This document shows positions 3,120 to 29,347 of a DNA stretch of 50,904 bases, piece by piece. Position numbers and translations under genes: made by a program. The DNA is from Bigelowiella natans CCMP2755 (Eukaryota; Protista; Cercozoa), in the NCBI GenBank assembly GCA_000320545.1, contig ADNK01002344.1, positions 1 to 50,904 of the forward strand, read 5' to 3'. Position 1 is the stretch's first letter. Each line of letters starts with the position of its first letter. The notes beneath the pieces are model-generated. The model saw only the letters and a program-made list of their open reading frames with translations, was not told the DNA's origin and ran no database searches.

Positions 3120-3465
3120 TTAGAAGGCTTCATTCCAGTAGCTTTCCCCGGTTTCCTCCTCTGTGTCGGGAATGATACTGGGAGCCTGAAAGGGATATGG
3201 CGGTAAATAACATGTCAGTCAAGGTGGAGGTTTAGTCTAATGTAATAATATCTTTATATATTATGACTTAAATGGGCTGTACAGACCGTCGACATAGTAT
3301 GCGAGTCATCGTCAATGGTCCCGCAGCTCTCCATGGCCCAGATCACTCGCCTAGTCATCGCTTGGACACTCGAATACCTAAGGTTGGAAAGAGGAGGATG
3401 GTGCCGATCCGTAAGTGATTTAACTTCTCGATCTCCCCCCCGCCACACAAATGGCGTAGTTGTAG

Positions 3466-3501
<36 letters not shown>

Positions 3502-6500
3502 CTGCAAGTGACGATAACACACCAACCTGGGCAGGTCTATCTGGAAGAAGCAAGTATGGGCGAGCGGGAAGAAAGAATCTGCTCATGCACATCATTAAGG
3601 GCGGTGTCAAATTACTACACGCCGGAAAAGAGACTATAGCTTGTGGGCGATGGTCCGCGGCTAAAAACGCGATGTTGCTCCAATTGCCCTCCCCTTCCTC
3701 CTCGATATAGAAGAGACGCTGGCCAGTGTGCTGTGAGTAGTGGGTAGTGAGTGGTAGCTACCTGGGTCGTCCGAGCTCTCGCTGGCATTATGCGAGGTGA
3801 TTTTGAATTTTTGTTCGTAGTCTTTCTCGGAATGTGGTAGCCGCGAGCTGCAATTATGTTATATATTATTAGCGAAGGGAGGCAAGAGAGGCTAAAGTCG
3901 AATGCCTCAAAATCAATCGCGCGCAAAACTATATGCCGGCGGCGGCGTTTTTCGCATACCGTCCCCATGTGAAGGAGATGAATTTGGCCCGCTGGTTGTC
4001 ATCGAAGACGTTCTCGAACATCTCCCAGAAGAAGCGTACGTGCTCATCCTGGAGCCCATTCAACATGCAGGAAACGAAGAGGGGGGGGGGGGGGGAAGAG
4101 GACGATATTATAATCGGGGCAATGCGTCCTACATGCATGCCGACATGTGCACGATGCATGAGTTGTATGTGTGTAAGTATAGAATCCTACATCTGGTGAG
4201 CATCCCGAGTAGGATGTCATTCGTTTAAGACTCGGTATGCGGGATTTCGTGACGCCTGAGAGCACACCACCAAAAAACACATCCAAGTAGTCAGTCTATC
4301 ATCGCATGGGGAAGAGTGATGATAATGATGATGATGATGATGATGATGATAGCGAGTACATAAGATGCAAGGGAAGAGGAGAAGGGGGGGCGGGGGAGCG
4401 AGAGGAACCTTGGCCACAGACGAGCATCTCAAGTTCTCTCCACGTAAAAAGCGAGAGAGTGGACAGAGCCACCACTTGCCCTACATTATTATTATAAGAT
4501 CAGTTAATATCAATAAATTGTGACACGACGACGATGATGATGATGATGATGATGATGATGGTGATGGTGGTGGTGGTGGTGGTGCTGGGAGTCAATTGAA
4601 GCGAAGCGGGCGCTGGCAGCAGCAGCAGTAGTTGCTTAATAAGAACTAAAATTCGTCGCTGCTGCTGCCACCGCACGACCCTCCCTCACTTCCCCAACGT
4701 CGTCGTCTGAGACAGATAAAACATGGTGAGTATTCATCATACCTAAGCCTCTTCTCATTGCTTTGGTGTGGAACTCGAATTCGTACAGCCGAGCGTTCCT
4801 GAGTGCTTCGATGTACCTCTTGCTGTTGGCCTTGGTGACGGGGCACCTGGCCCCATCCTCGATGAGGGGAACCACCTTGCCGTCGCACTGGCAGTAGCTG
4901 AACTTTATTCGAGCGAACTGTGAGTTGAAGTCGTTCTCGGACACCCCCTGCTGATGGAGCAGGGCCTGGATGGGCTCGATGGAGGTGAGGGCGGTTTGGT
5001 CGATCGCCTTGATGTCGTTCTCGGTCACCACGTCGCCCACCAGAGGTTTCCACACCACGCTGGGGAAGTTGAGCGGCAGCAGGAACTTGGTTCGGATCGC
5101 AAGGCCGAAGAAGCGTCCGAGGAACTCGTACAGGGCCTTGTGCAGGAGCGACTTCGACGAGGTGCGCGGGACGAACGAGTCCCTGTTTCTGCCGGCATCC
5201 ATGCGACCGTTGGGCGTCTTGATGAACAGTGGGAGCGCTGGAGATTCGAGTTCCCGGCACATCGTCTCGATGGCGTCTCTGTATGGGCCACCGGCATCGA
5301 TTGCGTTCATCCCGATGTAGTTCGCTTTGAACGCTCTGTGATTCTCACCGATCTTGAATACCCTCTCAATGCTGCGGTGCTTCAGCTGCTGGTAGAGCTG
5401 CCCGAAGATGGTACGGCGAGCCTTGTGGTCCGTCTGCCTCTTCAGGGTGACGTTGCTGGCGGCAATGACGTCCAGGTCGACGCTGTCGCCAACGTACTTC
5501 GAGCCGGACGCGAGCATGTACACTGTCTTGCCGAGAGTCTCAGCGAGCATGATTTGCTTGGGATAGGTGAAGATCAACGCCCTGACCTTCCTTATCGCGT
5601 CGGCGAGCGAGGAGAACCCCGACGGCAGGCTCAGATCCGTGAACATCAACGATTTGAGCACCATCTTAGAAAGCTCCTGGAGCACGTTTATCTGTAACTC
5701 AATGTGCTCGTCGCCATGGTGGTTAGAGGAGAGCTTGTCCCCAAGGAGATGCAGCTCGGGCACCCCAGGCGTGTTTTCGATCGGCGACATGTTCTTCTCG
5801 AGCGACCAGCGGTTGACGGCCTCCACGATGCTCTGCACGTGCTGTGGGCCACACATCGAGTCGAGGATGTGGAAGGCCTCCACGGAAATCTTCTTTATCT
5901 TGATATCGCTCCGCCGGACGAAGTCGTACTGGTGCTTCGGCAGGCCAGAGGGGGGGAACTCCATGTCGATAGGGATCACGATGAGCGGCAGCTCGATGGG
6001 CTCCAGACCGTTCACGAAGGAGCGCGTCAATTTGTTCTTCCGAATATCGAGCTTGTCCTGATGCGCTGAGGGGTAGCGGATCTGCCACCTCGTGCCGTCA
6101 TCGAAGTCGACGCTGGCAACGCCCCCCGTCCAGCTGCGCACCTTTCCAGCGTACCACGCCCACTTGTCGGGCGTGTTGTGGTCACCAAAGGGCGCCACCA
6201 CACGGATGCCGACGCGCGGAGTGATGGCTGCAGGAGGCTCCAGAAGGTACTTTCCAGATATCGGCGGATATGTGAACTTCTTCAGCTCTCTGCTCGACCG
6301 CGGGGAGCGGACAAACAGCTCCCATCGTCCAGCCTCGATGTCCACGCACTTGCACTGAACGCACTCGCTCTCCACGTAGCACGTGTTCTTTCTGTAACCG
6401 GTGGCTTTGACGAACACGCGGTCTCCAATCTGTACCGGGGGAACCAGCTCCAGGTTTGTCGGCATCTCTTTCTTCGGAACGCACAAATGCGTTTTGGCCC

Positions 6501-9500
6501 TCACCACCACCTGCGAGAGCGAGAGGGAGCCGAAGTCCTTACGTTGTATCCTGAGGTACCTGATCGTGCACCGCTGGCTGTCCCGTACCTTCTCATACAA
6601 TTTTTCGGCGGCTTCGTCCTTGATCTTGTACTTCTCCACAAACTCAGCGAATTGGGCGTCGGACATCTTGAGCACCTCGTCCATCGAGGACCCAGTGATG
6701 AGGAGAAGCCTCTTCAGCTCGTTGCTCCATGCGCATTTTCTGTCGTCATCATTATCATCATCACCATCATCATTGCGGCTTCCGGTTGTTCTGCCCAGCG
6801 CGTACTTGCTCTTCTCCTTGGACAGCTCTAAGGAGACATTGAGTATGTACGGGTCGGTCGGTTCCTGCCTGTCTTTTCGTTCTGCCATATCGACACAGAA
6901 CACAGACTGCTCGATAAGCTCCTCCATCGAAGGCTCCTTTGCATCGTCAACGGCCTGCAGGAAACCGAACACATAGCAGCTCTGGATGGAGAGGTTGGCC
7001 CCGGATGAGGAGGACGACGATGACGATGATGATGTTCTCGATGACGAGACAAAAGGGGTGTAGATCCTGACGCTCTCAACATCGATGGCTCGGCCGAGAT
7101 CCAACTCCCAGAACGCGTTCTCCTCCTCTTTGGTGCACGAAGCATAGAAAGGGTTGGCGTTAATATATCCGTCAACCGCCCTCCGTGCTGCAAAGAGCGG
7201 GCTGGCAGTGACGGATGCTCGTGTTGCGGCTGACAACGGGGAAGAAGAGCCCCGCTTTTGCTTGGCATCTTTTTGATCTTGGCGCCTATTCTTCTTCGAG
7301 TCTGCGGAGGGAGGCATGCTCTGCGACCCTCGGCTGTTGCCGTCGTCACGATACAGATGCATCCCCGCAGGCATTGGTCGTCGAGAGCTTTGGCGTGCGA
7401 CACGCCCATAGGACGCGTTGCTATCTGCGGTGATCTCACGTGATACGAAATTCTTGAGAACCCTCTTGGCGAAGAGACTAGGCTTGAGGGAGGAGCGCTG
7501 TTGCTTCAGACTTCCAGCACGAGACCTCGCACTTACCCCGCCCCCGAGTGAGTCACTGCTAACAACAGCAGCTGCACCGCCTATGCTGTCACTGCCGTCC
7601 ACGTTGACAGTGTCCAGAGTGTTTGCGAGGTTCAGGAGATCGGAGAACCACATGATGTTCCGGCCGCTGCTCCCGCCGACAGCAGCTGTGTCCGCGCCAC
7701 GGTAGAATGCGGGGAACGCCACGCGATCGTCATCCTCAGTGTCCTCTTCATCCTCCTCTTCCTCACCGCTGGTGTTGTCTCCAGATTCGAGGGCAGCAGC
7801 CTTGGCATCGGAGGAGTTAGTTCCGGGGGTAGTTGTCATCGTCCGCACCTTGAATCGCCGCCGCAGCCGCCCGAGCTTCTTCCTTCGATTCTGGCTGCGA
7901 TACAGCTCTAGGTTGAGCTGCAACAGGCTCTTAAAGAACGTGGAGAAATTGGGCTTTATCCTAGCGTGCAGCTGTATCATGTACTGAAACAGGAGTCTCT
8001 GGTACCTCTGCGTGATCATCGCGGGTTGCATGCGCCGCAGCGCAGGGTGCGAGTTGGCCGATATGATGTTGCAGGCGACCTGCAGGAGAGGTAGGTGATA
8101 CTTCGTAGGCCCTTTCACGATGCACGAGAGGATCAAGTTCATCACGGGCTTGCAGAAGACGTACGGGCGAAGGCTGAGGACTGGACTCTGAGGCTCCTTG
8201 TCCACTGCGTGTTGGAAGATGCCCAGGAAGATGTCCAGCAGCCAGAATACGATTCCGGGGCTAGGGGATGAGCCGGCTAGGATTGGTGATTCCCCCTTCT
8301 CTTTCGTGTCACCCGAGGCGGCCGCCGTCGTCGTCGCGGAAGTGCCATACTCGACCATAAGAAGCAGCTGGAAGACGAGCTCCCGCACCAGCATTGCGAC
8401 AAACGGCGCATGGCGCGCAAGGTAGGACAGCGAGTGCTGCTGCGAAGCCTGTGAACTGCTGCTACTGCTGCTGCTGCTGCTGCTGCTGCCTCCACCACCA
8501 CCACCACGATTGCTGGACTTGTCAGGAGATTGGATTTGCCCCGTGAACAAGGAGTCAAATTTCCCTGCGGCTTCTTCCTTGATCCTGGACACGACCCATG
8601 GCTTTAACCTGTCGATGGCCCCGTGCAAGCTCGACATCTCAAGAACCCTCAAGAGCTTCACTATCCACTCGCAGCCATAGCTACTGCCTGATGACGACGA
8701 GGAGTTGTTGTTGAGGAGAAAGTCGTACTGGGAGGTGTTCGAGCTGTACAGTAAGATTGAGATGACGCTCTCGCGTGCATACATCACACCAAGCGCGCGC
8801 TCAACGAGCGGGCGCATCCGGACGAGCTTCGCCCGTGCCAAACGAAATGCCTCAGATTTGGAGAACTTGTGCGACGGCACGGTGAGGAAGGACGTCACCT
8901 CATCTGGCGCTGGGGTGCAAGTTAGCGGCCCGTATACCTGCGAGTCCACGGTCAAAAGCTCTTGAAGGGCAGACCCTCCTGCCCCCTTTCCGTGTGATGA
9001 ACGTGATTGGATCTTGACGAGATTTTCGAGCTCCTCTGGGGTGATCAGCTCTTCCTCGCCCTGGTCTTCCTGATGGTGGTGATGGTGGTCATCGGTCACT
9101 TCGTCCTCGTCGCTGTTCCAACCCGACGACTTGTCTAACAGCTGTTCCTCCATCTCTGCCAACCGACTATACGCGCTTGGCCCAAGCCCAGCCGCCATGG
9201 GGGAGGGGCTAGTGCCGAGTGTAGACACACGGTAGGCAGGTGAATGAAAGAGGGGCGGCGAAATATCTCCCGGCTGCTGTCCCGAATGACGGCGAGGGCT
9301 ATCTGAGCAAACCTCCGACCTGATCTTAGACTTGACTTCGTTACTGTTATTCGTGGCTGGAGAGGATTCAAATTCTTGCCAGAATCTACGGGATACCCTT
9401 CGAGCATTGGCAGCCTTTACCTCGTTCCCTTGTCCAGAACGGTTCTTGGCGAGCTTGATCGGCGATCCGTACAGTCCAGTGGCGTAGTGAGACTTGATGT

Positions 9501-12500
9501 GAGTGCTTGCCAACTGATCAAGCTCTGAAAGAATCGGGAGACTGGAGGAAAGGCTGGGGAGGCGACCTGCTATCGGACGTCTCAGCTCACGTGAAGCGCC
9601 GCCGCCACTGCTGCTGATGAACGTCGGGAGCTTCGAAAATATGAGCAGTAGCATCCTGTCCCAGGTTTGGCCGAGCGGCATCTCCACGTCAATCTCGCTG
9701 AGTGCTTGTTTCCCCGCCATCACGCACAGGCTCTCCGGAAAGCCAAGCCAGGTGAGGTGCTTCGCCCGCTTCACCACTTGCCGGACTCTCTCCTCAACCT
9801 TGAGCTGGTGCCAGTTCAACAGGAGATCGTTCGCAGCCGCCCGGATTTTGAACCTGTTGCGAATCAGGACCTTGAGCGCGATGAGCCGCGAGCACCCATT
9901 TCCAATGCCGATCAGGCTTGACATGTATCGATCCACAGGGAAGTAGTTGAGCATGAGCTGCTTGGAGGGATCATCCTCGTGATCTGAATCATTGATGAGA
10001 AGCGAAGCCCGCACGTAGACACCGTGTTCTGGTTCTGCCACCGCATGCGGGGCGCTCAGTAACTTGAAGCCACCGGTAGCTTGGGCCACTGGATCGACGA
10101 CACCAGAATCCCTCGGAGCCGTAATGTAGAATTCGCGCCCAAGCTGGAGCGAGATCATCTGGGTCTTAAGAAGCCTGTGCGCTGGCAGCGTCCAAGAATC
10201 CTTGTTAATACTGACGGTTATACCTGCCTCCTGGCTCACTCGAACACCGAACCTGAACCACCGTTTCTGAGGGAAGAGCAGGGGTGATTGGTGGCCTAAG
10301 ATCTTCATTCTGCCGCTAGGAAGCAGCTCCACAATGCCGTACTCTCCTGAATCGGAATATCTTAGGACCCGAACCTCATGCTTGCTATCTGTGAGGTCCT
10401 TTAGGTGCGTGCATGATGCAAGCTCGGCAAGTGGAACCGATAGGATCGCCTCGTCTAGGCTGCTCGACTTCCTCCCGTGGCTCCCCTCTTCCTCAAACCG
10501 CTTTTGCTTTTGCTCCGCGTGTGCGGTGGACACCACCTTGAACAGATTTAGCGTCTTCATCTCTCCCGAGAAGCACCTCGAGTTGAGGTCGGTGCCGATG
10601 AAGCCGTTTCGGCGGGGGATCCGGAGCGTGAAGTCCTTCTTGAATCGCATTCCCGCCTTGTCCAGGAGCTGCTCGGTTATGGTGGGGGGGGATTCCTTGC
10701 ACACATGCACCTTGACATCTACCACCTTGTTCGACCGCGAGAGCTTTGATCCTCGCCATTCGAAGGGGTAGCCGAAGGGACGGTCCTCCATTCCTTCTGA
10801 GAACGCTAGAAGGGCCCGCTGTGTGGAGGTTTCCCGGCAGTAGACCCCGCCCCCATCTACACCCCCGGTCGTGGCCTGAACGGACGACGACTTCTTATTC
10901 TTCTGTTGTTGCTGCTGCAGCGGCACAAAAGAACTCTGTTGTTGCTGCTGCAGAGGCTGCAGTGGTGGCGAGGGCTGCTGCATCGTGAACTCCAACAGGA
11001 GGTTGGACAGTGGGTCGGGGCACCGGATCGGCTTCTTGAACTCAAACCGCACCCACTGGTCGCTCTTCGTGGGCATCTTCTTCTCGTTGTTGGGGAGCAG
11101 GATGTCCTTCTCGGACACCGACATGTCAAAGTCCCCGTCCGTATACTTGACCTGATACGTTCCGTCGCGGTTTATCCCTGTGATCACGGCCGAGTAGGTG
11201 CGGCCGCCGTGCCACTTCGCCTTCACTTTTTCCTCCTTCTGGAAGAGGTTCCCGGAGAAGAGGCCGATGGGAAGATTTTCGGGCCCGTAGACTACGTTCG
11301 TCTCAACGTATCTTTTGTCGCTGTTCGCAAACTCAGATTTCTCCGTCCAAGCGTAAGCGATCCGAACGTTGTGCAAGTCTCTCTTGGGAGCGTTGTATGC
11401 TTTGATAGAGATGCCGGAGATCAGGGTCCCATTCTCAATGCCCACGTTTGCGAGCTCTGAGCTCAGATATATGCTCTGATATTCCAAGTTCATGAACGCG
11501 GTGTTCAGGGGGTAGCCGTGTGCCTTCACCCCGACCGACTTAAAGTGCTCACACAGCTGGATATCGGCCGAGAGGTGGCCGCACGATTGATCGAAGTTGG
11601 CCTTGAAAATCGGAGAGGAGATTTGTGAGATGCTGGAGCTTCCAACAGGGCCGCTCCCTCTGTTCTCAAGGGCCTTCGAGGCCCCCTCGAGGATGATGAA
11701 TGGACTGTGCAGACGATTGCTCTCGAACGTTGCGATCAAGGTGTAGGTGAGCTTTTCGTCCTTCCCGATCACGTCGACATCGAGGCTTTGCTGATGTGGC
11801 GACGGATAATGCATGCGGTACTTTGAGACAACGCCGGCGCGCTCGATGATCACGGTCGCCACGCCATTTTCCCACTTCTCGACGGATCCTGGGAACCAGC
11901 CCCACCTATTCGGGCTTTTCTCTTCCAAGAAGGGTACCATTACCTTAGCGTCCTCCTCTGGGAACAGCGGTCCATCCTTCTCAGGCAGGATGTACTCCCC
12001 AGTCTGTAGAGGGTATTCCACCAGGCGTCTCTGGGCATTCTCCCCACCTGGCGGGGCGATAATCTGCAGGAAAAACCGTCCATCTTTCCTCCTGGGGTAG
12101 CACATTTCAACACGGCCCTCGACGTAGAATTTGCTGGACGACGTAGTCTGCGCAACGCCGGACGAGTCGAGGTCCATGCAGTCTCCGGAATTGGCACCAG
12201 CTTCGTCGTGCCTCACCATGACGCGCTCTCCCACACCTATTGGACATTCCTGCATGAGCAGAATCATGGGCGATTGGGATGTGTTGGCGTCGAGCATCTT
12301 GACGAACTCCAAGTTCATGGGAGACAATGATTTGGAGGCATCGTCAGTGATGGCGCCGCCTCCGCCGCCGCCGCCGCTACCACCTTCACCGCTACCACCA
12401 CCACCGCCCCTATCAGTTCCTCTCGGAGAGAACTCTGTCATGGTGTTTTCCTCCGTTGCCTTGGGAGATGCATTGCTCGGAGTGGGAGAGAAGTTCGCCG

Positions 12501-15500: not shown

Positions 15501-18500
15501 TCTTTCCGCTTCTCGACTGCCGCGGCCGCCACCGAGTTGCTAAGCCTCACCTGACTGCTGCGCCTCTTCTTTCGCCAGCATGACATGAGTGCTGACAAGA
15601 GGGCAAAGTCAACGTTGTGGTCGCAGATAACCTTGACGAGGTGGCCTAGATTGAACGCTTCCAACGCCTCCGCGAGCGTACCTGAAACGTCCAACGCATC
15701 AGGAAGGGTATCTCTTGTCTCGTAAGAGAGAGCCCCGTCTCCCCGCCCAGCGCTAAGACGCGGGCTGCTGCTACCACCCCCTTGGACACTACCATGCGAT
15801 TGATAATTGACGCTTACGCACGGTCGTCGGGGTCCGTGAAGGAAAGGCAACAAGTCCTGCAGCTCGCGGGACTGGCCCTGCATCAGGTCCACATCGTGCG
15901 CCGTGTACTTGAGGTCCTCGTGAGCGCATTTGACCTGGGAGTGGTTAAGCGCGAAGTTCCACACCCCGACGTTGGAAACGGTACCATGGAAGCCGTTCAC
16001 AAAGACGACCTTGCGGCCAGAATGCAGGCTGACATTTCCCCTCTCCAGGATGTACAGGGTCTTCTCCTTCTTACCCTCGAGACGCTGCTGCTCTCTTCGG
16101 ATGGCGCGAATGGCGTGGGCGAGCCGGAGGGTTTGTGCATCATTCATGCCGACGCTCTCCGCCATGGTTTCCAGGGCACTGGAATCCGACTGAAAGGGGA
16201 GCAAGGACTCCAAGCTACCATAACCGCTCCCACCGAGCTTCTCCACGAACTTCTCCAGGTCGTACAGAACGAGGAGTTCGTCAAGATTTTCGATTGGTAG
16301 GGACCGTTGTCGTTGCAGTTCCAGGGGAAGACGAGGAGTCTCAGGTTCGTTCTCGGGCTCGGAGCCGGTACATTCCGAGAGCTGCGGTGAAAGAGGAGCG
16401 GCAAAGACGGGGTCATTCACCTCCAAATTACCGCCACCAGACACAATCTTGGGGCCCTCAAAAGATTTTGGCGTCGTGAAGTCGTCATCGAATTGAAGGT
16501 GCCTGGCATCCGCTCGTAGTATCAGCTCGCCAGATTCGTAAATGGAGATATCGTGGCCCTTTGTCACAGTGACGGTCAGCGAGTACTTTCGCTTCTTCGA
16601 ATCCAACTTGCAGTGCGACACTTTCCGCCGGTCCTTGACGCTGACGTACAAGCCTCCCTTTCGTGCAGCGATGTTGTACAGAGGCTTCCCAGCACAATCA
16701 GTCAGCGTGAGCAGCTGCCTGCAGTTCAAACCAATCGATTGCTCATCCGGGCGCAACCACAGGGAGAAAGTAAGTCCTTCCGGCAGACCGGGACGCTTGC
16801 ACAGGTGCGGCATTCTGAGGAAGAATTCACAATAGGGGTCGACCTTCAAGCTCGCCTTTCGGCAGTCGGGTTCGGCGAACGCACAGGATATCTGTGCCGG
16901 CTGCCCTCCCAAGACATCCCTCACCGAGTGCCTCAGGTAGTTTTGCTTGCGTTTGAACGCGTAGAATGTGTATATAGTTGTCCACGCCTTGCTCTGCTGC
17001 GAATTGTCGAAGGGCGACTCTACCTCTACGATCCGGAATTGCTGTATTTTCTTCAAATCATCCCTTCTCTGTATCTGGTATTCGCTCGAGCCCTGGACTT
17101 TACTCGGGAAGACATGAAACTGCTTGGGAACGGCTGTCGTCGGCGTTCTCCATTTGCTCTCCCGCGCTCTGACACCAGCCGCTACATTGGTCGGGTGCAA
17201 CTTACTTGGGCCCTCGGGCATGAACGCGAAGAAAGGGCGATCGCCATCATGGAAGTTGCTCGATATGTACACGTTGATGGGGACCGATCCTTCCACCGGA
17301 TTCAAGAAAGCAAAGAAGTTGAACAGCTTCTTCCCGAAGGCGTTCTTGTCGGTGCTGGTCTCCGGAGTCGTGGCATTGGAGCCCGTCGTTGTGTTCCCCG
17401 CCTTGCCTATGTTGCATTTGACGGTGGGCTCGTTGTCCACAGCCTTCACCAGCACCAGCTGAGAGCGCCCCTTGAAGTCCGTGACAGATAACTCCACGAT
17501 GCTTTCGGCTGACCGCCAGAGCAGGCGCGGCCCGCTCCGTATAGTCTGGGACATATCGGTTACCAGAAAGACAGCGTCTGGGTACGGCGGGAGCTTTCGG
17601 GATGAAGCCCCGATCTCGGTGTTGCACGCGAGACGAAGCTCCTCCCGGGAGAGGGCTCGCATTTCTGTGTCAGTGAGTACGCCAGTGAACAGCCTCGGGT
17701 TCTGGATGTTGCCCTTGAAGCCGGACTCCGGTTTCGGGAAATCGTCCGCTCCCTTGCCGACCTTCACAACGCTGCCTGCTGGCGACGCTCCCGGTTGCAA
17801 CGTGCCCGAGTTCTCCAGATTGCCGTCCACATACAGCGCTACGGCTCCGTGGTTTATCTCAGAGTGGGTGACGCCTACGTGGTGGATCTTGCCGTCGTTG
17901 ACGGGGGTGGTACCTCTCACAGCTCCCCTGCCGGAGCAGGGAACAGAATCCTTGAAAACCTCGTGGGGCTCAAGGTCCACCTGGCCGTCTCCGTCTTCCC
18001 AGTTCACGGTAATCTTTCCATCCTCGTTCAGTCGTACGACGGTCGCGGGGTACTGGGAGCCGCCCTTGTACTTTGCCATCACCTTGTCCCCCAGCGAGCA
18101 GATGCTCCCCAGCGACCCGAAGTGCAGAACGTTGTTCTGGATGTAGAGTCCCTTGGCGCCCTTCTCAAAGGGCCCCGTCGGTGCGCACTGGGCGATGATC
18201 GCGCCCTGGTTGCCTGCGTTCTGAATGATTGCGCTCAAGCTGAAGTTCCCGCTCAGCCCCAGCTTTGTCTCCGAGATCACCTGCGTTTCCCCGTTGAAGG
18301 TCTTTGCCTCCGCCAGCAGTACGGATTTCTCAAGCACCCTCCTCAAGGTTTCCTCGGTGGTTTCGACCAGGAGGTCCCGGCTTGACTTCTCGTTCCTGGA
18401 CTGCAGTTGGTGAAGGCGCAGCTCCTCGGTGATCGAGTTGACCCGATTCGCGGCGACGAGGCAGTTCTCAAGGTTCCTCATCGAGGGCTGGATCTTCTGG

Positions 18501-21500
18501 ATCGAGTCCAGGGGTTGCATGGCGTACTGGACGAGGTTTTGGATGTACTGCCGGTTCTCGTTCTCGAATTTCTCTCTCCACAGCCCTCCCGAGGATTGCA
18601 GGATCTGTGCGAGCACGCGCATGCACATGCGATGTAGCTGGAGGTTCGATCTTCTCTCTGGCCAACGGGCTATGGAGCCTGGGGTTGTCGGCATCAACAG
18701 GCTATTTTCATCTTCCCCGAATCCGCCTCCTATTACACCATCGTCCTCCAAACTGCCCGTAGTGATGGCACGCACACCCCCCTGGGACTTGAAAGCGGTG
18801 GAGTTGCCGTAAGTGAAATTGGCTAGCTTTGCAATCAAGTCCTTGACGTGGCTCAAGTGGTGGTACGGGAACACGACATCCTCCAAAAGGTGCAGGGCGG
18901 TGTCGTTCTCAACGGTGACGACGGACCCCGAGTCCAGCAGCAGCGCCGTTCTCTTCGACTTTGGGAGGGTTCCCGAGGACGCAGAAGCGAGGAACTTGAA
19001 GCCCCAACTATTTGAGTTTACGTTGCTAGTTTTGAAGTAGACGACGAAGCTGTCGCTCGGAATAAGAAGGGGCGATTCCTTACCGACCCCGGGCCACTTG
19101 CGCCCTGAGTAACCGTGAGGGTTGCCGAAAACCTGACGCTTGCGTCTATCTTTGTAGAAGTACAGAGTGTCCGACTTGGTCTGGCTGCGGGTGTCGAAGA
19201 CCACCTTGATCTCCTTCGCCCCCGGCATTCTCACATCAAACCACTGGGACGTGGAGCGATCGTGGGGATGCTGCGACTGTATCGTGATGTCCTGAATCTG
19301 CTCCTCGGACACGACCGAGTTCTCCGGGCGGAGTATGTGCTGCGAGAGCCGAATGACGATTCCCGGATCGCTCTCCGAGCGCAACCGCACTAAGCTCCCC
19401 ATCCGGAGTGCCTCCTTCTCCCCCCCGAGGATTGCGAGCGCAGACACCAGGTTGTTCGTGAGCTTTTCGTCGTAGCCGATGGTCCGCTTCTTGGTGCTCG
19501 TCAGATCGTTGAGGGCCCCCAGTAGGAACCTCTCCGCCTCCCTTCGCCACAGATTAGTTCGCTCCGCGGGCGAGTGGCGGGTGATGAGCGAGCGGTAGAG
19601 GTAGATGGTTTCCCACGCTAGCGTGGCGTTGTTCGTGAATAGCTCCGAAGGCGCCAGAGAGAGGAGGTGTGAGTGTGGGTTGCGAGGGCTACACCCGTGA
19701 AGATCCGATCGAACATCGACTGTAGCAACTGTTGCGAGCTGTAGAGAAGGCTGGTGCCATTCGGCTGCGTGTACGGCAGCGCCTTTCTGAGGACGCGAGT
19801 AACGAGGATTGACACCGATGAATTCGGCGCGAACCCCTCCATCACGATAGGGAGGAGGATATTCAACCACCGTGGGGAAGCAATAGCAGTGGCCATTTTC
19901 TCAGACTTGACAGCACGGACTAGTACCCACAACTGTTGGCACAACTGAAGCTCTAACTCAGCCGCAGTTAACTCGTTTTTATGCAGTTCCTCGCCACTGT
20001 CTTTGTCGCTCGATGAGCTTCCAACCTTGATGAAGTTCGTGTTAGCAGAATTACCAGCGGCAGTCGAGGGACTCCCACCAGCGGAAAGGGAATCTTGTCG
20101 TTGTCCTCTTTGCTGATCATTTCCCTCAGAAGCAAAACTGGAGATGCTGCCGGAATCTGTGAGATATCGCGCATGCTTGGCAACGCGGATACGATCGGAG
20201 CTTATGGAAACCCATTCTTTGACCCCAGAATGGAGAAATCTGACATTGATGTCGCTGGGAAGCTTGGAGATGAGTATGGCCTCCTTCCAGTCGCCATGGT
20301 CATTCAGCACCTCAATCATCATGCCGGTCTTCAGAGAGACGCGCCATTTCCTATCATTTATGTGCTTGTACCAAGATATCGAGCAGTCCGAGAGAGCCAT
20401 ATCGGACCAGAGAGGATAGTCGTCGCCTCCTGCAGCATTGGGCTCGATATCGTCATCGTCCAAAAGCTCGTGGTCGTCAGGGGGCCCGGATCCTTTAGCT
20501 CGGACGGATTTGCCTAGAACGCCCGTCTTTTCAAGCACGGTTTCCTTCAGCGCGATGACCACGGTGTCGTCGGGATTGAACCTGCGGATCATTGCATCGC
20601 ACCATCTTCTCTTAGGCCTGCTGTAGTAAACAACCTGCTGGCCAACGTGGAACTTTGCGGTCGGGACCCCGCCCTCTTCAGGGCCCACTCCACGAGGATG
20701 CTTGTTTCTGGGAGGGTGTGAGCCTTTGGCGAATTTCTTGCGGTCGAGAGGCTGCTGGGTCTTTTCATCATGGTTTCTGCTTCTGCTGCTGCTGACGCTA
20801 CCTAATTTCTCGTCCACGGCTACGTGCTTCTTGGCCCTAAGGAGGTGGGCTCGACGGGCTGCAACGACACGTGTGAACCAGTCAAATTCCGTCTCCAGCA
20901 TATTGCACACGTTCTTTAGCTCAAGCAGGGTGTCCCTGTCGTCCATCTCAAGCAGATCGTCGACTTCATAGCCTTTGTCCTCGAAGGTAAATGCGAATCT
21001 ATCGAGCCCGATCAACGAGCACAGCTCTTTTACGCTCTTCGGCTTTGGAGCCTCCAGAACGCGGTTCAGTGCCCGATTCTCGTCAATTACCTTCTTGCGT
21101 GCTCGCGTCAAACTCTCAACACGCGAGTGTATCACATCCAGGATAGTCTTGCAAAGAACCGGGTATTCGCTTGCATTGTCAAAGGCCATGTATGATACCA
21201 GGCGAAATAGTAGCCACGCGGCGATCTGTACATATATTTCTTGTTCTCCAGCCGGGTAAAGGATTCCAGACCCAAGTCCCTCGCCCTTGCCGTCGCTAGT
21301 AGCAGCATCATCCTTATCATCATCCGTATCGTCTGTATTTGAGGTGCGAACCTTCTTCTCCTTCTCCTTCTTCTCCTTTCTCTTTGGCCGGGGCACTGGC
21401 TCTAGCGCTTTCGTCTTTTTCGAGGACTGCGCGGAGCCGCGCATGGAGGCCAGCTTCGAGAGCCTCGACACAAAGCCTATGCTCTGTATGTGGCCCAGGT

Positions 21501-24500
21501 CACAGGGTTCAAGGATGGAACACAGCTCGATTGTGCACCTCTTCATGACTACGGAGGAGCCCTTACTTGTGCGGTCCAGGTTGAACATGAAGCTGATGAT
21601 TCCGAAGTAGGAGTCGCCGAGGGCGCGAGTGAGTTTCGGCCCAGCGCATTCCACAGACGTGAGATAGTGGTGCGGGAAGGTCCTGTTGCGAACCAGGGCG
21701 TCTGGACTGCTGCCGCTGTTGCTGCGGCTGTTGCGGGCGCTCTCCCTCGCCGCTAACGAGGACGATAGAGAAGATGCCGAGTTGGCCAATTTTGACGAGG
21801 AGTTTCCAGAGGAGAGGCAAAAGACCCTGGCAAGATGGTAAAGGGCCTGGTTCATAAGAACCACGGCGGTTGATTCGCTCTGAACCACCCTACTCGACTC
21901 GTCAACATCGAGCATGCCGTACTCTCCGGGCGCGTCCCTGCGTTTTCCCTCTGGCCAGGCCATATCCTTGGGAATCACAATCAAGGGCGTATCGACTAGA
22001 TCGATCTTCTGGATGAAATCAAGGTCTAGCCCCCCCCCATCCGGAGCCAGTCTGCCCCTGTGGGGGCTCGGATACCTGATCTCCCAACTTGTCCCATCGC
22101 CGACATTGACTTTGGCCTGATTTCTCCTCCACTCGCTGACGCTTCCAGCGTACCAGGCCCATTTGTCCGGTGTTTTCTCGTCTTGGATCGGGATGAACAC
22201 CCGCGATCCGACCTTGGGCTCCAGCGTATGACGAGGGCACACCAAGTACTCGTCGTTGCTGGGTGGGTAGGGGAAGGCCTTCTCCTTCTGGTCGGATAGG
22301 GGTGCCCTCACTCGCAACTCCCAACCAGTTCTCCCGACCGGCACGCAAGACGACACAGCCCCCTCCAAGTAGCACACGTGGTTTTGGAACCCCTTCGTGC
22401 GCACGAGCACCCGCTCCCCCCGCGAGAGCGGCGGGTGAATCTTCTCCGATACAAACGGTTCTGGTGAGCGCGTAGGTGCCGATATCTGTGGAAACTGAAC
22501 AAAGCACGTCAGCAGCGACTGAAAATAGCGCAAGCCTTGCAACCTCAGCAGGGCGCGCGATCTCTGTATCAGCATCACTTGCCGCACAGATTTCGAGCCG
22601 AATCTCTCCGGGACCGCGGACAGGATGGACAGAATATCCTCACACACGTTCTCAGCGGAAGAGCAAGCTTGGTCGGCCACGGAAACTGTGAGCAGCTGCC
22701 TTCTTACAATTTCTTTTTTTGCCCAGGCCAAAGCTGATTGGTGGAATGACTTCTTGTGGTCGGCCTTGCGCCACTTCGAGGATCCAGATCTAGCGAGCCG
22801 CATCGGAGAGAGCAGGTCATCGTCATCATCAAACTCCTCGTCGAGCATTCCTGGAGAGACACCCATCTCTTTTCTCTCGCTATTGTTAAAGAACGGAATG
22901 GCCCGTACAGCAGGGGGCGGTTGCAGCTCTAACAACAGCCGAAGCCTCTCCCTATATTGCTCGCACAAGTTGTCCATGTTCGCACCCTCGCCTTTTGCGC
23001 GCCCCAGCTCCATCTTTATTCTCCTCACTCGAGACCACCACTCGACGAGGATTTTGAGCACTAGCTTACACTTGCCTTCAAGAGGCTTTTTTTCCTGCTT
23101 TCCCTGCTCTCTATCCATCCGTTCTAGAGTCCTTGCTACGTAGAGCGCGGGCTCAATCATGCGCGTGTGCCGCAGAATGGCGGCGAAGGCAAGTCGGCAT
23201 ATCGGCTCGGAAACCCTCTTTACGGACCCGGGAAGGATAACAGGTCTGAAGTTGCGACGAATCTCTTTCAGTAATATCATCCCAAGGCTCTTCTCCTCAC
23301 AAATGAGCTGAAGAAAATTGTTTGCTTCGTGGTCAATGGCGTCGTCGTCGTCGAATGATGTGGTGGACGTGCCGGAGCCCTTCCTCTCCCTGACTTCTGG
23401 CTGCTGCTTGAGCTCGCCCTCTTTTCTTGCGTAAGAGGGCCGAGAGCCAAGGAGGCTCTCATCCAGAATGGACTGGAGTTCTGGAATGACACCGCTTCTA
23501 ATGCCCCCCTTCAGGAGCGTGCAGTGTATCCAGCTAGTAGTGGCTGGTGACCCTTCGATACTCGTCAGCGGCAGCGAGAAGGTGAGGTGGCCGCACATCA
23601 TAGACGCTACTCTTGCAGTGATGACGGCAAACCGAGAGTGCAGCCAACGAACCACGTCGACTAGAGGGTGGTTGGAGTCCTTTACCTGCGTCACAACCTT
23701 TTCGACGAAGCTCCGGTGCTGCTCGAGGAGGCTTTTCAGGCGCGGAATCATCCGCAGGCAGAACTTGGGCCTCGAAGACAGTCGCGAGCACACCGTCCAG
23801 ATCGCTACCATTATTTCCCTGGCCGTCGAGCCAAGAATGGAGCTTTGGATGCAGCAAAGCAGCCAGCGCGCCTGCGTGGGGTTTTCCTTGGCGGATTCGA
23901 CCATAGTAGAGAGCTGCTCGTACAGCCGCTCACAGTCTCGGATAGCGCTCTCAGCGATGTCAGCGAAAATACTGCAGTACATCTTGGCGTTGCGAGAGGC
24001 CTGCGATGGGTGCACGTTCCCCAGCATTACCCTGCGGAATGGATTTCCGCTTGAGGAGGATGAGCCGCTTCTATCTCCCCACCCGCCGCTATTCCGACTG
24101 TTCCCGTTAGACGAATCGCCTTCGCTTTGTAGCAAGTTGAACTGCCGCATCCATTCTTCTGCATTGACTAGTAACCATTCACCCGCCCGCTCGATGTCAT
24201 CGTCCGCCCCTTCCATGGCAGCCTCGCACACGGCACGTGTATAACCGAGGTCCATCAACCTTCTAAGATCCCCAGTAGGCGCTTCTTCTCCCGAACTCAT
24301 CTGGCTTTCCAAAGCCGCCGCATTCTGTGAGAGGTACTCGGCGGCAGCTTCTACGCTACCGTCGCTCCTCTGCAGGGCTTCAGCACACGCCTCTTCGCTG
24401 TACCCCAGGTCCACAAGCGTCTGTACCTGATGATAATGACAATAACGATGATAGCATAATTAAGCACGAGGTGATGAGCTTACGACCTCAATATCATAGC

Positions 24501-27017
24501 TGAGGATGAGTTCAACAAAAAGGAAGTTCTCAATGCATGGTTCACATACACACAACAAACTCAAAGAATGGATTGGTTTGTGCCCCTCCCTACACTCGAA
24601 TATCATTCCTCGAATTAGTTAGTTGGCAGAAACCAGTTCTGAGAGCCCCGAGTTGGAGGAAGATCGGGGTGAAGCAGCCCCAGCCCCCACAGGAGCAAGC
24701 ACAAGAGAGGGCGTTCCTTTTGAGTCCTCAGACGCCGACGACGCCGACTTCGCAACTTCAGCCTGCTTGAGCATCGCGGCCTCGGAGTCCAACCAGAATC
24801 GCGTTCGAGCAATCAGCTGCCTCAAAAGGCTGTTCGCCATAGCCAGGTGCCCCGTGCGGAACTTGGATTGAGTCCCTTTCCCTCGGAATTCGAGAGAATA
24901 TCTTGCGTCTAGCAGCGCCCTGTAGCCGTGTGGAGTATGTCTGAGCAGGTGCGATGCGAATATAAGCTTGCCGCTCCCGGGATTGTTGCTCTGCGCGGAG
25001 AAGGTAACGGCGGGCGTCAATCCGGTCCCTATCCGAAACCCTTTGAAGGCTATTCCTGGGGTCTTCCCGTTAAGATAAAAGCTCATCTCGCGCTTATCTA
25101 GGTCCAGCGCACAGCCGACGATATCGCCGACGTTCCACCGGCCAGTTTTGTAGGGGATCTTGCCGTTGTGAAAGCAAACTTGGCGGATTCCGTCGTAGGC
25201 CCAGGACACCTTATCGTCCCCCGTGCCGTCGTTGTATCCCGGCGGCTTGAATTCGTCCTTGATCGCCCAGCCGATCTGGCCGATGTATTTGGAGGTCAGC
25301 TTCACTTCGTAGTACCACTTCCCCCTCTTGAGCCTCGGCCCCTCAGCAATGCACGTTGGGAAGTTCGACACGGCTCTCACCCTCCGGTCGTTGATCGCAA
25401 TCGCACCCTCTCGCGACGCGACCTTCAAGCACTGAACGGTGTAAGGCTCCTGTTCCGAGCTCCAAACTTTGGCCTCAAGCTGCGCCTGTGCGCGATGGAG
25501 GTCAGTGTTGCGCAGGTGCAACCAGAGATTGGGTATGACGATAATGGGGAGCTCGTTGAACTCGTAGCTCTCGATCTTCTTGTCGCTGATCGCGTCGTTG
25601 ATATTGGGGCTCGGGTACTTGAACTCCCCATCCTCGTTGTCATCAAACTTGACAGCAGCAAGGCCGGCGTTTCTATTCTGCGGCGAGCGGGTCCACCGGG
25701 TGACCTTCCCTCCGTACCAAGCCCACCTGCCCTCCACTCTGGGATCCCCATATGAAACGTAAACACGAGCGCCGGTCGACGGCGTTATCGCATTTCTAGG
25801 GGGCAGCAGGTACTCTTTCCGGGCGGGTGGGTACGTGAACGTCCGTATTGCTTCCGAGTTCCGAGGAGCCTTGACTTTGAGAATCCATTTCTTCTCTCCG
25901 ACGCCTGCCTCAAAAGGCGAGGATGACGACGACGACGACGACGACGACGGTTGGGAATACTCATCATCTGCCAACTTCACGTCGAGCACGATCCCGTCCA
26001 GGTAGCACTCGGCATGGCCCCGCGTGCGAACAAATATCCGCTCTCCGACTTGCACGGGGGCCATCTGTGCCAGGGAATTCAGCAGTCGCTTTCTCTCCTT
26101 CATTTCCTTTTCTTTACGCTCTCGTATCCGGCGGTGCCTCTGGCCTTCCTTCTCCCATTCCTTGTCCATGGTGATCTGCTTCATGTCAGTCTCCAGAGCT
26201 TCTTGGGAGAGGACCTTCAAGAACTTCTGGAAGTTTCTGAGGAGCCCATCTTCCGTCTCGAGTTCGTTGTACGTTCTGACTACGGTGAGAAACTTCCTGA
26301 ATTTGTTCATCATCACACCGTACACGTTCTTTTCGATTGGATTCAGCGCCTTCGATTCCTTCTCCTTGACCTTGATGATGAAGCGGATTTGGGATGCAAT
26401 GTCGGGGTAAAATATGTGCACGCCGTGGCTCAGGGTGCTGCTAGCTACTCTAGCGAGGCTTGCCCTGATGGAAGATAGGCCATTTCTGGCTTTATCAACT
26501 AATAGATGCCATACTAATTTTTGGAGATGACTCAGCATCACTCCCTCGGTGATTCGAGGACTGCTGCAGTCGCCGCCTTCCTTCTCCTCTCCCTCTTCCT
26601 CCCCGCCCACACAAAGTTCTTTTCGTTTCTTCAGTATTCGGAGAACCGTTTTTAGATCCTTCCGGTCTAAGGCAGTGATGATCTCACTATCTGTTCTTGT
26701 CGGTGATGGGAACGTCCTTTCGAGGGCTTTCAAGTCCGGATTCAGCCTGATCACGTCGTGCACATAGCCCATCGTAAGAGCTTGCTGATTCGTCTTTGGC
26801 GACGTAGGTGACTTCAGCGGCGAGGAATGAGCTCGCGGCTTCGGGGTAGGGAGGCGTGGCGTCTTGGGTGACAGAGGAGATGGAGGGGAGAACAGTGAAA
26901 GTGGGGCTTCGGAAGTTGCCAACTCGATTATAGTTACAAGCTGATGGCGCATTCTGATTTGAAGGAAGTTAATGCACACAAAAACACAACAAATTATATA
27001 TGTAAAAATATAATCAT

Positions 27018-27070
<53 letters not shown>

Positions 27071-29264: not shown

Positions 29265-29347
<83 letters not shown>

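What the first reader, a model, noticed from the sequence alone, without database searches (positions are those of the whole stretch)
5962..26061. Unrecognised ~130-160 aa module repeated five times through the giant E3
Seen: five dispersed homologous copies at ~25530-26061, 21961-22434, 12533-13090 (split by an intron), 11782-12246 and 5962-6442. Consensus: P(V/I)x.G(E/D)R(V/I)xV(R/K)xxG...CY(L/V)(E/D)G...W.L.V.(A/S)P....F.YPP...(E/K)YL....P..G.RV..P(F/Y).D...P..W(A/G)W(Y/F).G.V..W..G.A.V.FDDG......YPS(P/A)H. Three copies end in (E/T)(L)P(L/I)IVIP. Each copy looks like two SH3/Tudor-type barrels (both halves start G.RV and end YP), with a conserved W-x-W-(Y/F) aromatic cluster. Inference: a new tandem Tudor/SH3-like reader domain, possibly binding methyl-Lys/Arg or peptide degrons multivalently.
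Basis: partly seen in the sequence, partly recalled or inferred. Interest (0 to 1): 0.85.

Follow-up and report, generated by a model that had tools for sequence, protein, structure and literature searches.

The report
Lineage-specific tandem Tudor module in E3s
The five repeats are real copies of a roughly 160-residue double-barrel (tandem Tudor-like) module, found so far only in chlorarachniophyte algae and a few unassigned marine sequences, that is attached to ubiquitin ligases and a kinase and probably picks out their targets, perhaps through methylated lysine or arginine.

Summary
Observation confirmed. The window is Bigelowiella natans. Pairwise BLASTP gives 3e-16 to 9e-35. Transcript-type contigs from three studies confirm the 169-nt intron in copy 3.

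No copy reaches any Pfam cut-off, and MIB_HERC2 does not match at all. An exhaustive profile search of 1.84 billion proteins found only 19 hits. The true members come from chlorarachniophytes (Bigelowiella, Chlorarachnion, Lotharella, Amorphochlora) and unnamed marine contigs.

The module sits in varied architectures:
- a collinear 7801-aa ortholog with five copies
- U-box + 4 copies
- zinc finger + 1 copy + HECT
- ankyrin + 3 copies + kinase
- SAM + 1 copy
- ankyrin + 1 copy + SPRY

AlphaFold2 (pLDDT 95.7) gives two small beta-barrels plus a helical tail that ends in the PLIVIP strand. The best fold matches are tandem Tudor/Agenet methyl-lysine readers (Z up to 8.5). The second barrel aligns to canonical Tudor repeats (hhalign 98%, E 2.3e-13) and keeps the aromatic-cage pattern.

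Ligand binding is inferred, not tested. I class it as a new variant of a known kind, of moderate interest. The scan had earlier notes on this same stretch, but none on this module.

The parts
3287..30007 (-). Giant HECT ubiquitin ligase gene (about 7,800 codons), with four large exons and small exons at both ends. The JGI annotation splits it into several models.
   Evidence: Stop-free frames. Collinear with the single 7801-aa ORF P0001 from residue 1 to about residue 7780. P0005, P0006 and P0008 are 99-100% identical fragments.
25531..26061 (-). Module copy 1, with a Ser-rich insertion in barrel 1 and a PIIVIP tail
   Evidence: HMM 141.7 bits; alignment; ortholog P0001:971-1130
21961..22434 (-). 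Module copy 2, with a PLIVIP tail. Cage partly degenerate (Ile and Val at two aromatic positions).
   Evidence: HMM 182.1 bits; cage table; ortholog P0001:2059-2216
12799..13093 (-). Module copy 3, first exon part: barrel 1 and the start of barrel 2, ending at WGWFP plus the first base of the Gly codon
   Evidence: HMM positions 2-101, 95.8 bits; sequence read
12630..12798 (-). 169-nt GT..AG phase-1 intron that splits copy 3 inside barrel 2
   Evidence: Contigs of runs X1, X11 and X16 (three studies) join 12628/12629 to 12798/12799 and skip 169 bases
12533..12629 (-). Module copy 3, second exon part: the rest of barrel 2 up to YPSPH; no PLIVIP tail
   Evidence: HMM positions 97-132; alignment
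11689..12246 (-). Module copy 4, the most divergent copy: insertion in barrel 1, cage degenerate (Ile and Arg at two positions), degenerate tail
   Evidence: HMM 106.9 bits over positions 2-157; cage table
5962..6441 (-). Module copy 5, about 235 residues upstream of the HECT domain, with a full cage pattern and a PLIVIP tail. This is the copy that was modelled.
   Evidence: HMM 193.2 bits; AF2 pLDDT 95.7; sister to the copy of the small HECT protein P0009; P0009 residues 148-590 align to 5284-6594 at 45% identity
4714..5265 (-). N-terminal part of the HECT catalytic domain; the rest lies in small exons down to about 3287
   Evidence: Pfam HECT 80.6 bits against a cut-off of 23.9; tblastn of the HECT C-termini of P0001 and P0009
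24991..25320 (-). SPRY domain just downstream of copy 1
   Evidence: Pfam SPRY 74.8 bits
24157..24429 (-). Two UBA domains
   Evidence: Pfam UBA 55.6 bits, two stretches
17936..18118 (-). Single classical Tudor domain inserted in the LamG-like region
   Evidence: Pfam Tudor_3 27.9 bits against a cut-off of 25.8 when scanned alone
11080..11247 (-). Second single Tudor-like domain (below threshold)
   Evidence: Tudor_2 at 3.4e-5, PTM_DIR17_Tudor at 1.6e-4 and 53-BP1_Tudor at 3e-3, all below their cut-offs

Best explanation
The five repeats are copies of one compact domain of about 150-160 residues. Each copy has three parts: a very divergent SH3/Tudor-like barrel, a genuine Tudor barrel, and a short helical linker ending in a beta-strand (PLIVIP).

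The domain forms a lineage-restricted family (chlorarachniophyte algae and a few unassigned marine sequences) within the Tudor/Agenet 'royal' superfamily.

The second barrel keeps the canonical cage pattern. In copy-5 numbering this is an aromatic at the end of strand 1 (F85), an aromatic at the start of strand 2 (Y97, preceded by the hallmark W-A-W), an aromatic at the end of strand 3 (F113), an Asp in the following turn (D115) and a Trp at the start of strand 4 (W119).

The module is joined to HECT, U-box and kinase catalytic domains, and to Ank, SPRY and SAM adaptors. It is therefore most likely a mobile ligand-recognition module that brings these enzymes to their targets. In the giant HECT ligase, five modules, one classical single Tudor, a second sub-threshold Tudor-like segment, and SPRY, LamG and UBA domains would give multivalent target capture.

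The most likely ligand class is methylated Lys or Arg. The two near-invariant acidic residues beside the cage (D87, D115) would favour lower methylation states.

Shown: the repeats, the family, its distribution and architectures, the predicted fold, and the profile homology of barrel 2 to Tudor.
Inferred: ligand binding, the methyl mark, and the multivalent mechanism.
For: Repeats:
- BLASTP 3e-16 to 9e-35 between copies.
- Exactly five copies in the window.
- Copy 3 is spliced as predicted.

Family:
- A 29-copy alignment shows near-invariant G6, R8, C21, D87, W94, W96, G99, V101 and P124.

Fold:
- AF2 with that alignment gives pLDDT 95.7 and pTM 0.89, with all five models at 95 or above: two barrels, two short helices and a final strand.
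- VIA-align top ten are all tandem Tudor/Agenet readers: BAHCC1 TTD Z 8.5 (115 aligned residues), then FMRP/FXR1, UHRF1, SETDB1, AGDP3 and SGF29 (the same with the shallow model).
- Foldseek gives probability 1.00 for SETDB1, AGDP1, ADCP1, SGF29, UHRF1 and FMRP.

Sequence:
- Barrel 2 against repeats that Pfam calls Tudor_5, Tudor_3, 53-BP1_Tudor or BAHCC1-like_Tudor gives hhalign 98.0%, E 2.3e-13.
- Those proteins were almost the only non-family hits in 1.84 billion; P0019, the weakest hit, had no Tudor match in Pfam.
- Cage positions are aromatic/Asp in 25, 26, 26 and 26 of 28 copies, and Trp in 16 of 28.

Context:
- The same module occurs with U-box (4 copies), HECT, kinase + Ank, SAM, and Ank + SPRY.
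- There is copy-by-copy orthology with a 35-50% identical giant ortholog, so each copy has been kept over a long divergence.
Against: - No binding data exist.
- No copy reaches a Pfam cut-off, and no PDB sequence match is significant.
- Fold scores are middling (TM 0.35-0.46, Z about 8). The tool itself warns that Z below 8 can reflect a common arrangement.
- I could not inspect model coordinates, so the cage geometry rests on sequence alignment to Tudor repeats and on my knowledge of Tudor cages.
- The most conserved residues (W94, W96, R8, C21) are not the canonical cage residues. The key surface may therefore lie elsewhere.
- Copies 2 and 4 have degenerate cage positions.
Confidence: 0.62

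Rival explanations
1. The fold is the same, but the ligand is not a methyl mark. The module binds unmodified peptide motifs (degrons), ubiquitin or another protein surface. UBE2O's SH3-like substrate and ubiquitin-binding barrels work this way, as does the groove between the two barrels of UHRF1's TTD, which binds unmodified linker peptides.
For: - Single-barrel fold matches to UBE2O barrels at Z 5.3-5.5.
- Weak Pfam hits to SH3-C_UBE2O.
- UHRF1 TTD complexes with unmodified polybasic, spacer and Stella peptides are among the matches.
- The most invariant residues (R8, C21, W94, W96) lie outside the canonical cage.
- All partner domains belong to protein-protein signalling.
Against: The cage pattern of barrel 2, including the Asp, is conserved in about 90% of copies and aligns with canonical Tudor repeats. 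That is hard to explain if the cage is unused.
Confidence: 0.2
2. The modules are architectural. They pack against the body of the giant ligase or mediate oligomerisation, and have no external ligand.
For: - The positions of the five copies along the 7,800-residue protein are conserved between distant orthologs.
- The spacing between copy 5 and the HECT domain is kept in the small paralog P0009.
Against: The same module occurs as 3-4 tandem copies making up most of small proteins (U-box + 4 copies; P0004 with three copies and nothing else). This is the layout of a binding array, not of a scaffold insert.
Confidence: 0.08
3. The module binds nucleic acid, as reported for FMRP Agenet domains, or docks on RNA polymerase-like partners, as the CarD and UvrD/PcrA Tudor-like domains do.
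For: - FMRP/FXR1 Agenet pairs are tied for the top fold match (Z 8.0).
- Barrel 1 alone matches the PcrA/UvrD and CarD Tudor-like domains at Z 6.6-6.8.
- R8 is invariant and R12 is highly conserved.
Against: - No nucleic-acid-related partner domains appear in any architecture.
- Single-barrel matches at Z 5-7 are generic for SH3-like barrels.
Confidence: 0.06
4. The module is simply a member of an existing curated family (MIB_HERC2, or a described tandem Tudor family) and is not new at all.
For: Sub-threshold Tudor_5 and Agenet hits in about a third of copies.
Against: - No hit at or above any Pfam gathering score for any of 29 copies.
- MIB_HERC2 is absent even at E<=10.
- Only 19 hits in 1.84 billion proteins.
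- Barrel 1 and the C-terminal extension match no family.
Confidence: 0.04

Closest known systems
BAHCC1 / TNRC18 tandem Tudor domain (H4K20me1 / H3K27me3 reader; PDB 8ye8)
   Same: Best whole-module fold match: Z 8.5, 115 residues aligned, rmsd 3.6. The top ESM-Atlas shape match is a BAHCC1-like_Tudor cluster, TM 0.55. Both have two packed barrels, one of which carries a cage.
   Different: 16% identity. Pfam BAHCC1-like_Tudor hits only one of 29 copies, at E 0.077. There is no BAH partner. The module has an extra W-A-W loop insertion and a helical + PLIVIP extension, and it sits in ligases and kinases rather than chromatin proteins.
UHRF1 tandem Tudor domain (an E3 ligase that reads H3K9me2/3)
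   Same: It is the known case I am aware of (from general knowledge) in which a tandem Tudor targets a ubiquitin ligase. Fold match Z 7.3-7.8 over both barrels.
   Different: In UHRF1 the cage lies in the first barrel (my knowledge); here the pattern is in the second. UHRF1 uses a RING and has one TTD; here the partners are HECT or U-box, with 1-5 modules. There is no sequence match.
SETDB1 triple Tudor / Pfam Tudor_5
   Same: Best Foldseek matches (E 4e-4 to 8e-4, probability 1.00). It is the commonest sub-threshold Pfam hit for barrel 2: 11 of 29 copies, best E 3.8e-4.
   Different: Every copy is below the 31-bit cut-off. TM is only 0.42-0.46. SETDB1 has three barrels and a methyltransferase context.
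Plant tandem Agenet readers (AGDP1/ADCP1, AGDP3) and FMRP/FXR Agenet pairs
   Same: Whole-module fold matches: Z 7.2-8.0, Foldseek probability 1.00. Both occur as arrays of tandem pairs along one protein. Agenet is a sub-threshold hit in 10 of 29 copies.
   Different: No hit above threshold. The partner domains are different, and those families lack the C-terminal helical/strand extension.
Canonical single Tudor repeats (Tudor_5 / Tudor_3 / 53-BP1_Tudor-type) in brown-algal, cryptophyte and metagenomic proteins P0010, P0012, P0016 and P0018
   Same: Barrel 2 is homologous to them (hhalign 98%, E 2.3e-13) and the cage columns align.
   Different: These are single barrels repeated head to tail. 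They have no barrel 1, no 6-residue W-A-W loop insertion and no tail.

Membership tests
Tandem Tudor / Agenet ('royal family') fold | Two consecutive 4-5-stranded SH3-like beta-barrels packed into one unit | tested here: met
   The AF2 model (pLDDT 95.7, pTM 0.89) has strands 8-14, 20-34, 39-45, 53-58 and 80-86, 94-105, 108-113, 118-122. The top ten VIA matches are all tandem Tudor/Agenet proteins and span residues 1-160.
Tandem Tudor / Agenet ('royal family') fold | Significant sequence or profile similarity of a barrel to recognised Tudor domains | tested here: met
   Barrel 2 against Pfam-positive Tudor repeats: hhalign 98.0%, E 2.3e-13. Barrel 1 alone: only 23%, E 8.9e-4, so barrel 1 is assigned by fold only.
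Tandem Tudor / Agenet ('royal family') fold | Aromatic cage residues (three to four aromatics plus an acidic residue) at the canonical strand ends | tested here: met
   Columns F85, Y97, F113 and D115 are aromatic/Asp in 25, 26, 26 and 26 of 28 copies, and W119 is Trp in 16 of 28. They align with the corresponding columns of Tudor repeats. Window copies 2 and 4 are degenerate. The three-dimensional geometry was not inspected because no coordinates were available.
Tandem Tudor / Agenet ('royal family') fold | Binding of methylated Lys/Arg peptides | not testable with these tools
   Needs peptide arrays, ITC or a co-crystal.
Pfam Tudor_5 (PF18359) / Agenet (PF05641) | Score at or above the curated gathering cut-off (31 / 27 bits) | tested here: not met
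   The only window-copy hit is Tudor_5 on copy 5, 16 bits, E 0.01. Across the 29 family copies the best E-values are 3.8e-4 (Tudor_5) and 2e-3 (Agenet), and none is listed at or above a cut-off.
Pfam MIB_HERC2 (PF06701) | Any hmmscan match | tested here: not met
   No match at E<=10 for the five copies, nor among the families matched by the 29 copies at E<=1.
HECT ubiquitin ligase (host protein) | HECT domain above the Pfam cut-off | tested here: met
   80.6 bits against a cut-off of 23.9, profile positions 2-176 of 306 in the large exon. The remainder is found in small downstream exons by tblastn. The catalytic Cys was not checked.

The most novel reading that the evidence does not exclude
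Chlorarachniophytes evolved their own 'methyl-degron' machinery: a private tandem-Tudor reader family wired directly to U-box and HECT ligases and to a kinase. In this reading, methylation of Lys or Arg on non-histone proteins is read out as ubiquitylation or phosphorylation. The giant ligase would use five such readers, plus its single Tudor domain(s), to recognise multiply methylated targets.
Probability: 0.25. Interest if true: 0.7.

Novelty: new variant of a known kind. Interest (0 to 1): 0.42.

Why it matters
If the module is a methyl-mark or degron reader, the small U-box + 4-module protein would be a simple, tractable system for studying how a reader array targets a ubiquitin ligase. 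Few such cases are known to me, UHRF1 being the main one.

It also defines an uncurated domain family (alignment A2, 29 copies) that could be added to domain databases. It annotates about 800 residues of a 7,800-residue protein that is otherwise poorly described and is split into several models in the JGI annotation.

The interest is limited by three things. The fold is a familiar one, the family is confined to a small, non-model lineage, and the function is untested.

Tried and rejected
- Pfam on the five copies: nothing except Tudor_5 on copy 5 at E 0.01.
- Profile searches of PDB sequences with the whole module, barrel 1 and barrel 2: no significant hits. The best were circovirus Rep at 0.13, a Pif1-type helicase SH3 at 0.44 and a designed SH3 at 0.032, all taken as chance.
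- Own-genome search with the five-copy profile: only the window's copies came back, because the paralogs are cut into tiny exons. Protein queries then found them on contigs C522, C2852 and C2023.
- Internal duplication of the two barrels: only weak support (hhalign E 5.7e-4, probability 29.5%).
- ESM-Atlas feature search: all scores below 0.9, with Tudor_3/Agenet clusters as leads only.
- Raw RNA reads of run X23: a single read over the stretch, too sparse to use.
- Literature search for 'Bigelowiella natans' + 'Tudor': four papers, none of the three listed (by title and abstract) concerns this module.
- The joined sequence was never built or searched.


Full report
**1. The observation**

The minus strand of the window carries four very long stop-free frames: 24622-27081, 19621-24459, 12416-19900 and 4639-12729. 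Their translations contain SPRY, two UBA domains, a LamG-like domain, a weak jacalin-like stretch and the start of a HECT domain.

Three database proteins (P0005, P0006, P0008) are 99-100% identical to these frames. Two of them are JGI Bigna1 models 141141 and 141142. The window is therefore Bigelowiella natans nuclear DNA, and the published annotation splits this gene into several models.

A single 7801-residue ORF from an ENA assembly (P0001) is collinear with the window from about 30007 down to about 3287, at 35-50% identity. That makes it one gene.

Copy 5 needed a one-base frame correction (5962-6441). BLASTP between copies gives 9e-35 (c5/c1) and 3e-16 (c5/c4). Family HMMs run on the six-frame translation find exactly these five and nothing else.

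Copy 3 is interrupted after WGWFP-G by a 169-nt GT..AG phase-1 intron (12630-12798). Contigs from three runs of three different studies join the two sides and skip exactly 169 bases. The spliced form therefore exists, and copy 3 is intact in it.

The joined sequence was not built or searched.

**2. Is it a recognised family?**

- None of the five copies, nor any of 29 family copies, reaches a Pfam gathering score.
- MIB_HERC2 does not appear at all.
- Tudor_5 and Agenet appear below threshold in 11 and 10 of 29 copies.
- Profile searches of PDB sequences give nothing significant.

**3. Distribution and architectures**

A five-copy profile was scored by HMMER against 1.84 billion representative proteins. 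Only 19 hits came back.

The full-module hits that carry names are all chlorarachniophytes: Bigelowiella natans, Chlorarachnion reptans, Lotharella globosa and Amorphochlora amoebiformis. The rest come from unnamed ENA or Logan assemblies, one of them a marine metagenome scaffold.

The architectures are:
- the giant HECT ortholog with five copies at matching positions
- U-box + four tandem copies (P0002, P0024)
- three copies and little else (P0004)
- three copies + ankyrin + RanBP zinc finger + protein kinase (P0007)
- RanBP zinc finger + one copy + HECT (P0009)
- SAM + one copy (P0036)
- ankyrin + one copy + SPRY (P0014)

In the B. natans genome itself, family genes lie on at least three further contigs: C522 (the U-box gene, cut into many small exons), C2852 and C2023.

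A maximum-likelihood tree separates a 'HECT-type' clade from a 'U-box/kinase-type' clade (support 99/98). It pairs window copies 1, 2 and 5 with their positional counterparts in P0001, and it groups copies 3 and 4 with the adjacent pair in P0001 (row left out: the short second exon piece of copy 3). The five copies are therefore older than the split of the two species.

Copy 5 is sister to the copy of the small HECT protein P0009. P0009 aligns with the window from upstream of copy 5 into the HECT domain at 45% identity. 'Module + linker + HECT' therefore behaves as a conserved unit.

**4. Fold**

With only the five copies as alignment, AlphaFold2 gave pLDDT 87, and three of the five models were poor. 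With the 29-copy alignment, all five models reach 95 or more (best 95.7, pTM 0.89).

The model has two barrels of four to five strands, two short helices and a last strand formed by the PLIVIP motif.

VIA-align against 48,161 PDB representatives puts tandem Tudor/Agenet readers in all of the first ten places (the shallow model gave the same picture):
- BAHCC1 TTD: Z 8.5, 115 residues aligned
- FMRP and FXR1: Z 8.0
- UHRF1: Z 7.8
- SETDB1: Z 7.6
- AGDP3: Z 7.6
- SGF29: Z 7.3

Foldseek agrees, giving probability 1.00 and E from 4e-4. The ESM-Atlas shape search puts a BAHCC1-like_Tudor cluster first (TM 0.55).

The scores are middling, and the tool warns that Z near 8 can be a common arrangement. 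What carries weight is that the list is consistent and the matches cover both barrels.

**5. Sequence link to Tudor**

Four of the five non-family hits of the exhaustive search (P0010, P0012, P0016, P0018) are proteins made of repeated single barrels that matched only barrel 2. The fifth, P0019, the weakest hit, has no Tudor match in Pfam.

Pfam calls these four Tudor_5, Tudor_3, Agenet, 53-BP1_Tudor or BAHCC1-like_Tudor, far above the cut-offs. An alignment of 29 such repeats compared with the barrel-2 alignment gives hhalign probability 98.0%, E 2.3e-13 over 46 columns. Barrel 2 is therefore a true Tudor.

Barrel 1 gives only 23%, and the two barrels against each other give 29.5%. Barrel 1 is assigned by fold alone.

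**6. Cage**

In the hhalign alignment, the columns that hold the aromatic cage of classical Tudor domains correspond to F85, Y97, F113, D115 and W119 of copy 5. The identification of those cage columns is my knowledge of 53BP1- and SMN-type domains, not a test made here.

Across 28 copies, the first four are aromatic/Asp in 25, 26, 26 and 26, and W119 is Trp in 16. D87 is Asp in 27.

The family hallmark W-A-W sits in a six-residue loop insertion just before Y97.

Window copies 1, 3 and 5 keep the pattern. Copy 2 has Ile and Val at two positions, and copy 4 has Ile and Arg. I could not view coordinates, so the geometry is unverified.

**7. Reading**

The module is a lineage-specific variant of the tandem Tudor reader, and it is repeatedly fused to enzymes that modify proteins.

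The simplest mechanism is target recognition. The U-box or HECT part supplies ubiquitin transfer, and the modules, singly or in arrays, supply binding. That binding is probably to methylated Lys or Arg, but unmodified peptides or ubiquitin are possible.

In the giant ligase, the five modules are joined by one classical single Tudor (Tudor_3, 27.9 bits against a cut-off of 25.8) and a second sub-threshold one. They also sit alongside SPRY, LamG-like and UBA domains. This suggests multivalent capture.

None of the binding steps has been tested.

**8. Novelty and score**

This is not a new fold. It is a new, uncurated family with a distinct first barrel, loop insertion and C-terminal extension, and with new architectures. 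U-box + four tandem-Tudor modules is, as far as I know, undescribed, and a literature search found nothing.

I class it as a new variant of a known kind, with interest about 0.4.

Earlier scan notes on this genome independently name the organism, and list many other unusual Tudor fusions in it. They also note lectin-like folds in this same gene. None of them describes this module.

Noticed in passing
window 3287-30007 (-): The giant HECT gene is split in the JGI Bigna1 annotation into at least three separate models (141141, 141142 and a third unnamed fragment). The ortholog P0001 is one 7801-aa ORF, and a 17-kb transcript-type contig crosses part of the gene.
   Followed up: partly
window 17936-18118 (-) and 11080-11247 (-); also 20170-20667 (-): Besides the five modules, the protein has single classical Tudor-type barrels. 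One is above the Pfam Tudor_3 cut-off and is inserted in the LamG-like region. One is below threshold, between copy 4 and the middle of the last large exon. A weaker pair gives Tudor_KDM3B at E 0.028.
   Followed up: partly
G000:C522:3600-15740 (-): The B. natans paralog with a U-box and four tandem modules is broken into more than 25 very small exons (about 25-50 codons each). For that reason the profile search of the genome missed it.
   Followed up: partly
L021 (ENA marine metagenome scaffold) and L022 (Logan contig): Family members from unnamed assemblies are single uninterrupted ORFs in gene-dense contigs with intergenic spacers of a few hundred bases. B. natans, in contrast, is intron-rich. 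The source organism is unknown; it may be a compact-genome relative.
   Followed up: no
P0010 (Sphacelaria rigidula, 1394 aa): This brown-algal protein is made of 15-18 head-to-tail Tudor_5-type repeats (Pfam 423 bits). It is the strongest non-family hit of the module profile.
   Followed up: partly
window 12416-19900 (-), residues 621-746 and 1663-1726 of that frame: There is a Laminin_G_3 (ConA-like) domain above the cut-off and a sub-threshold jacalin-like stretch in the same ligase. This matches an earlier scan note about lectin-type folds here.
   Followed up: no
window about 26960-27081 (-): The stop-free frame upstream of the first large exon reads as alternating His-Thr and Ile-Tyr runs, that is, dinucleotide microsatellites. 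This is probably intron sequence between the exon ending near 27170 and the one starting near 26955.
   Followed up: no
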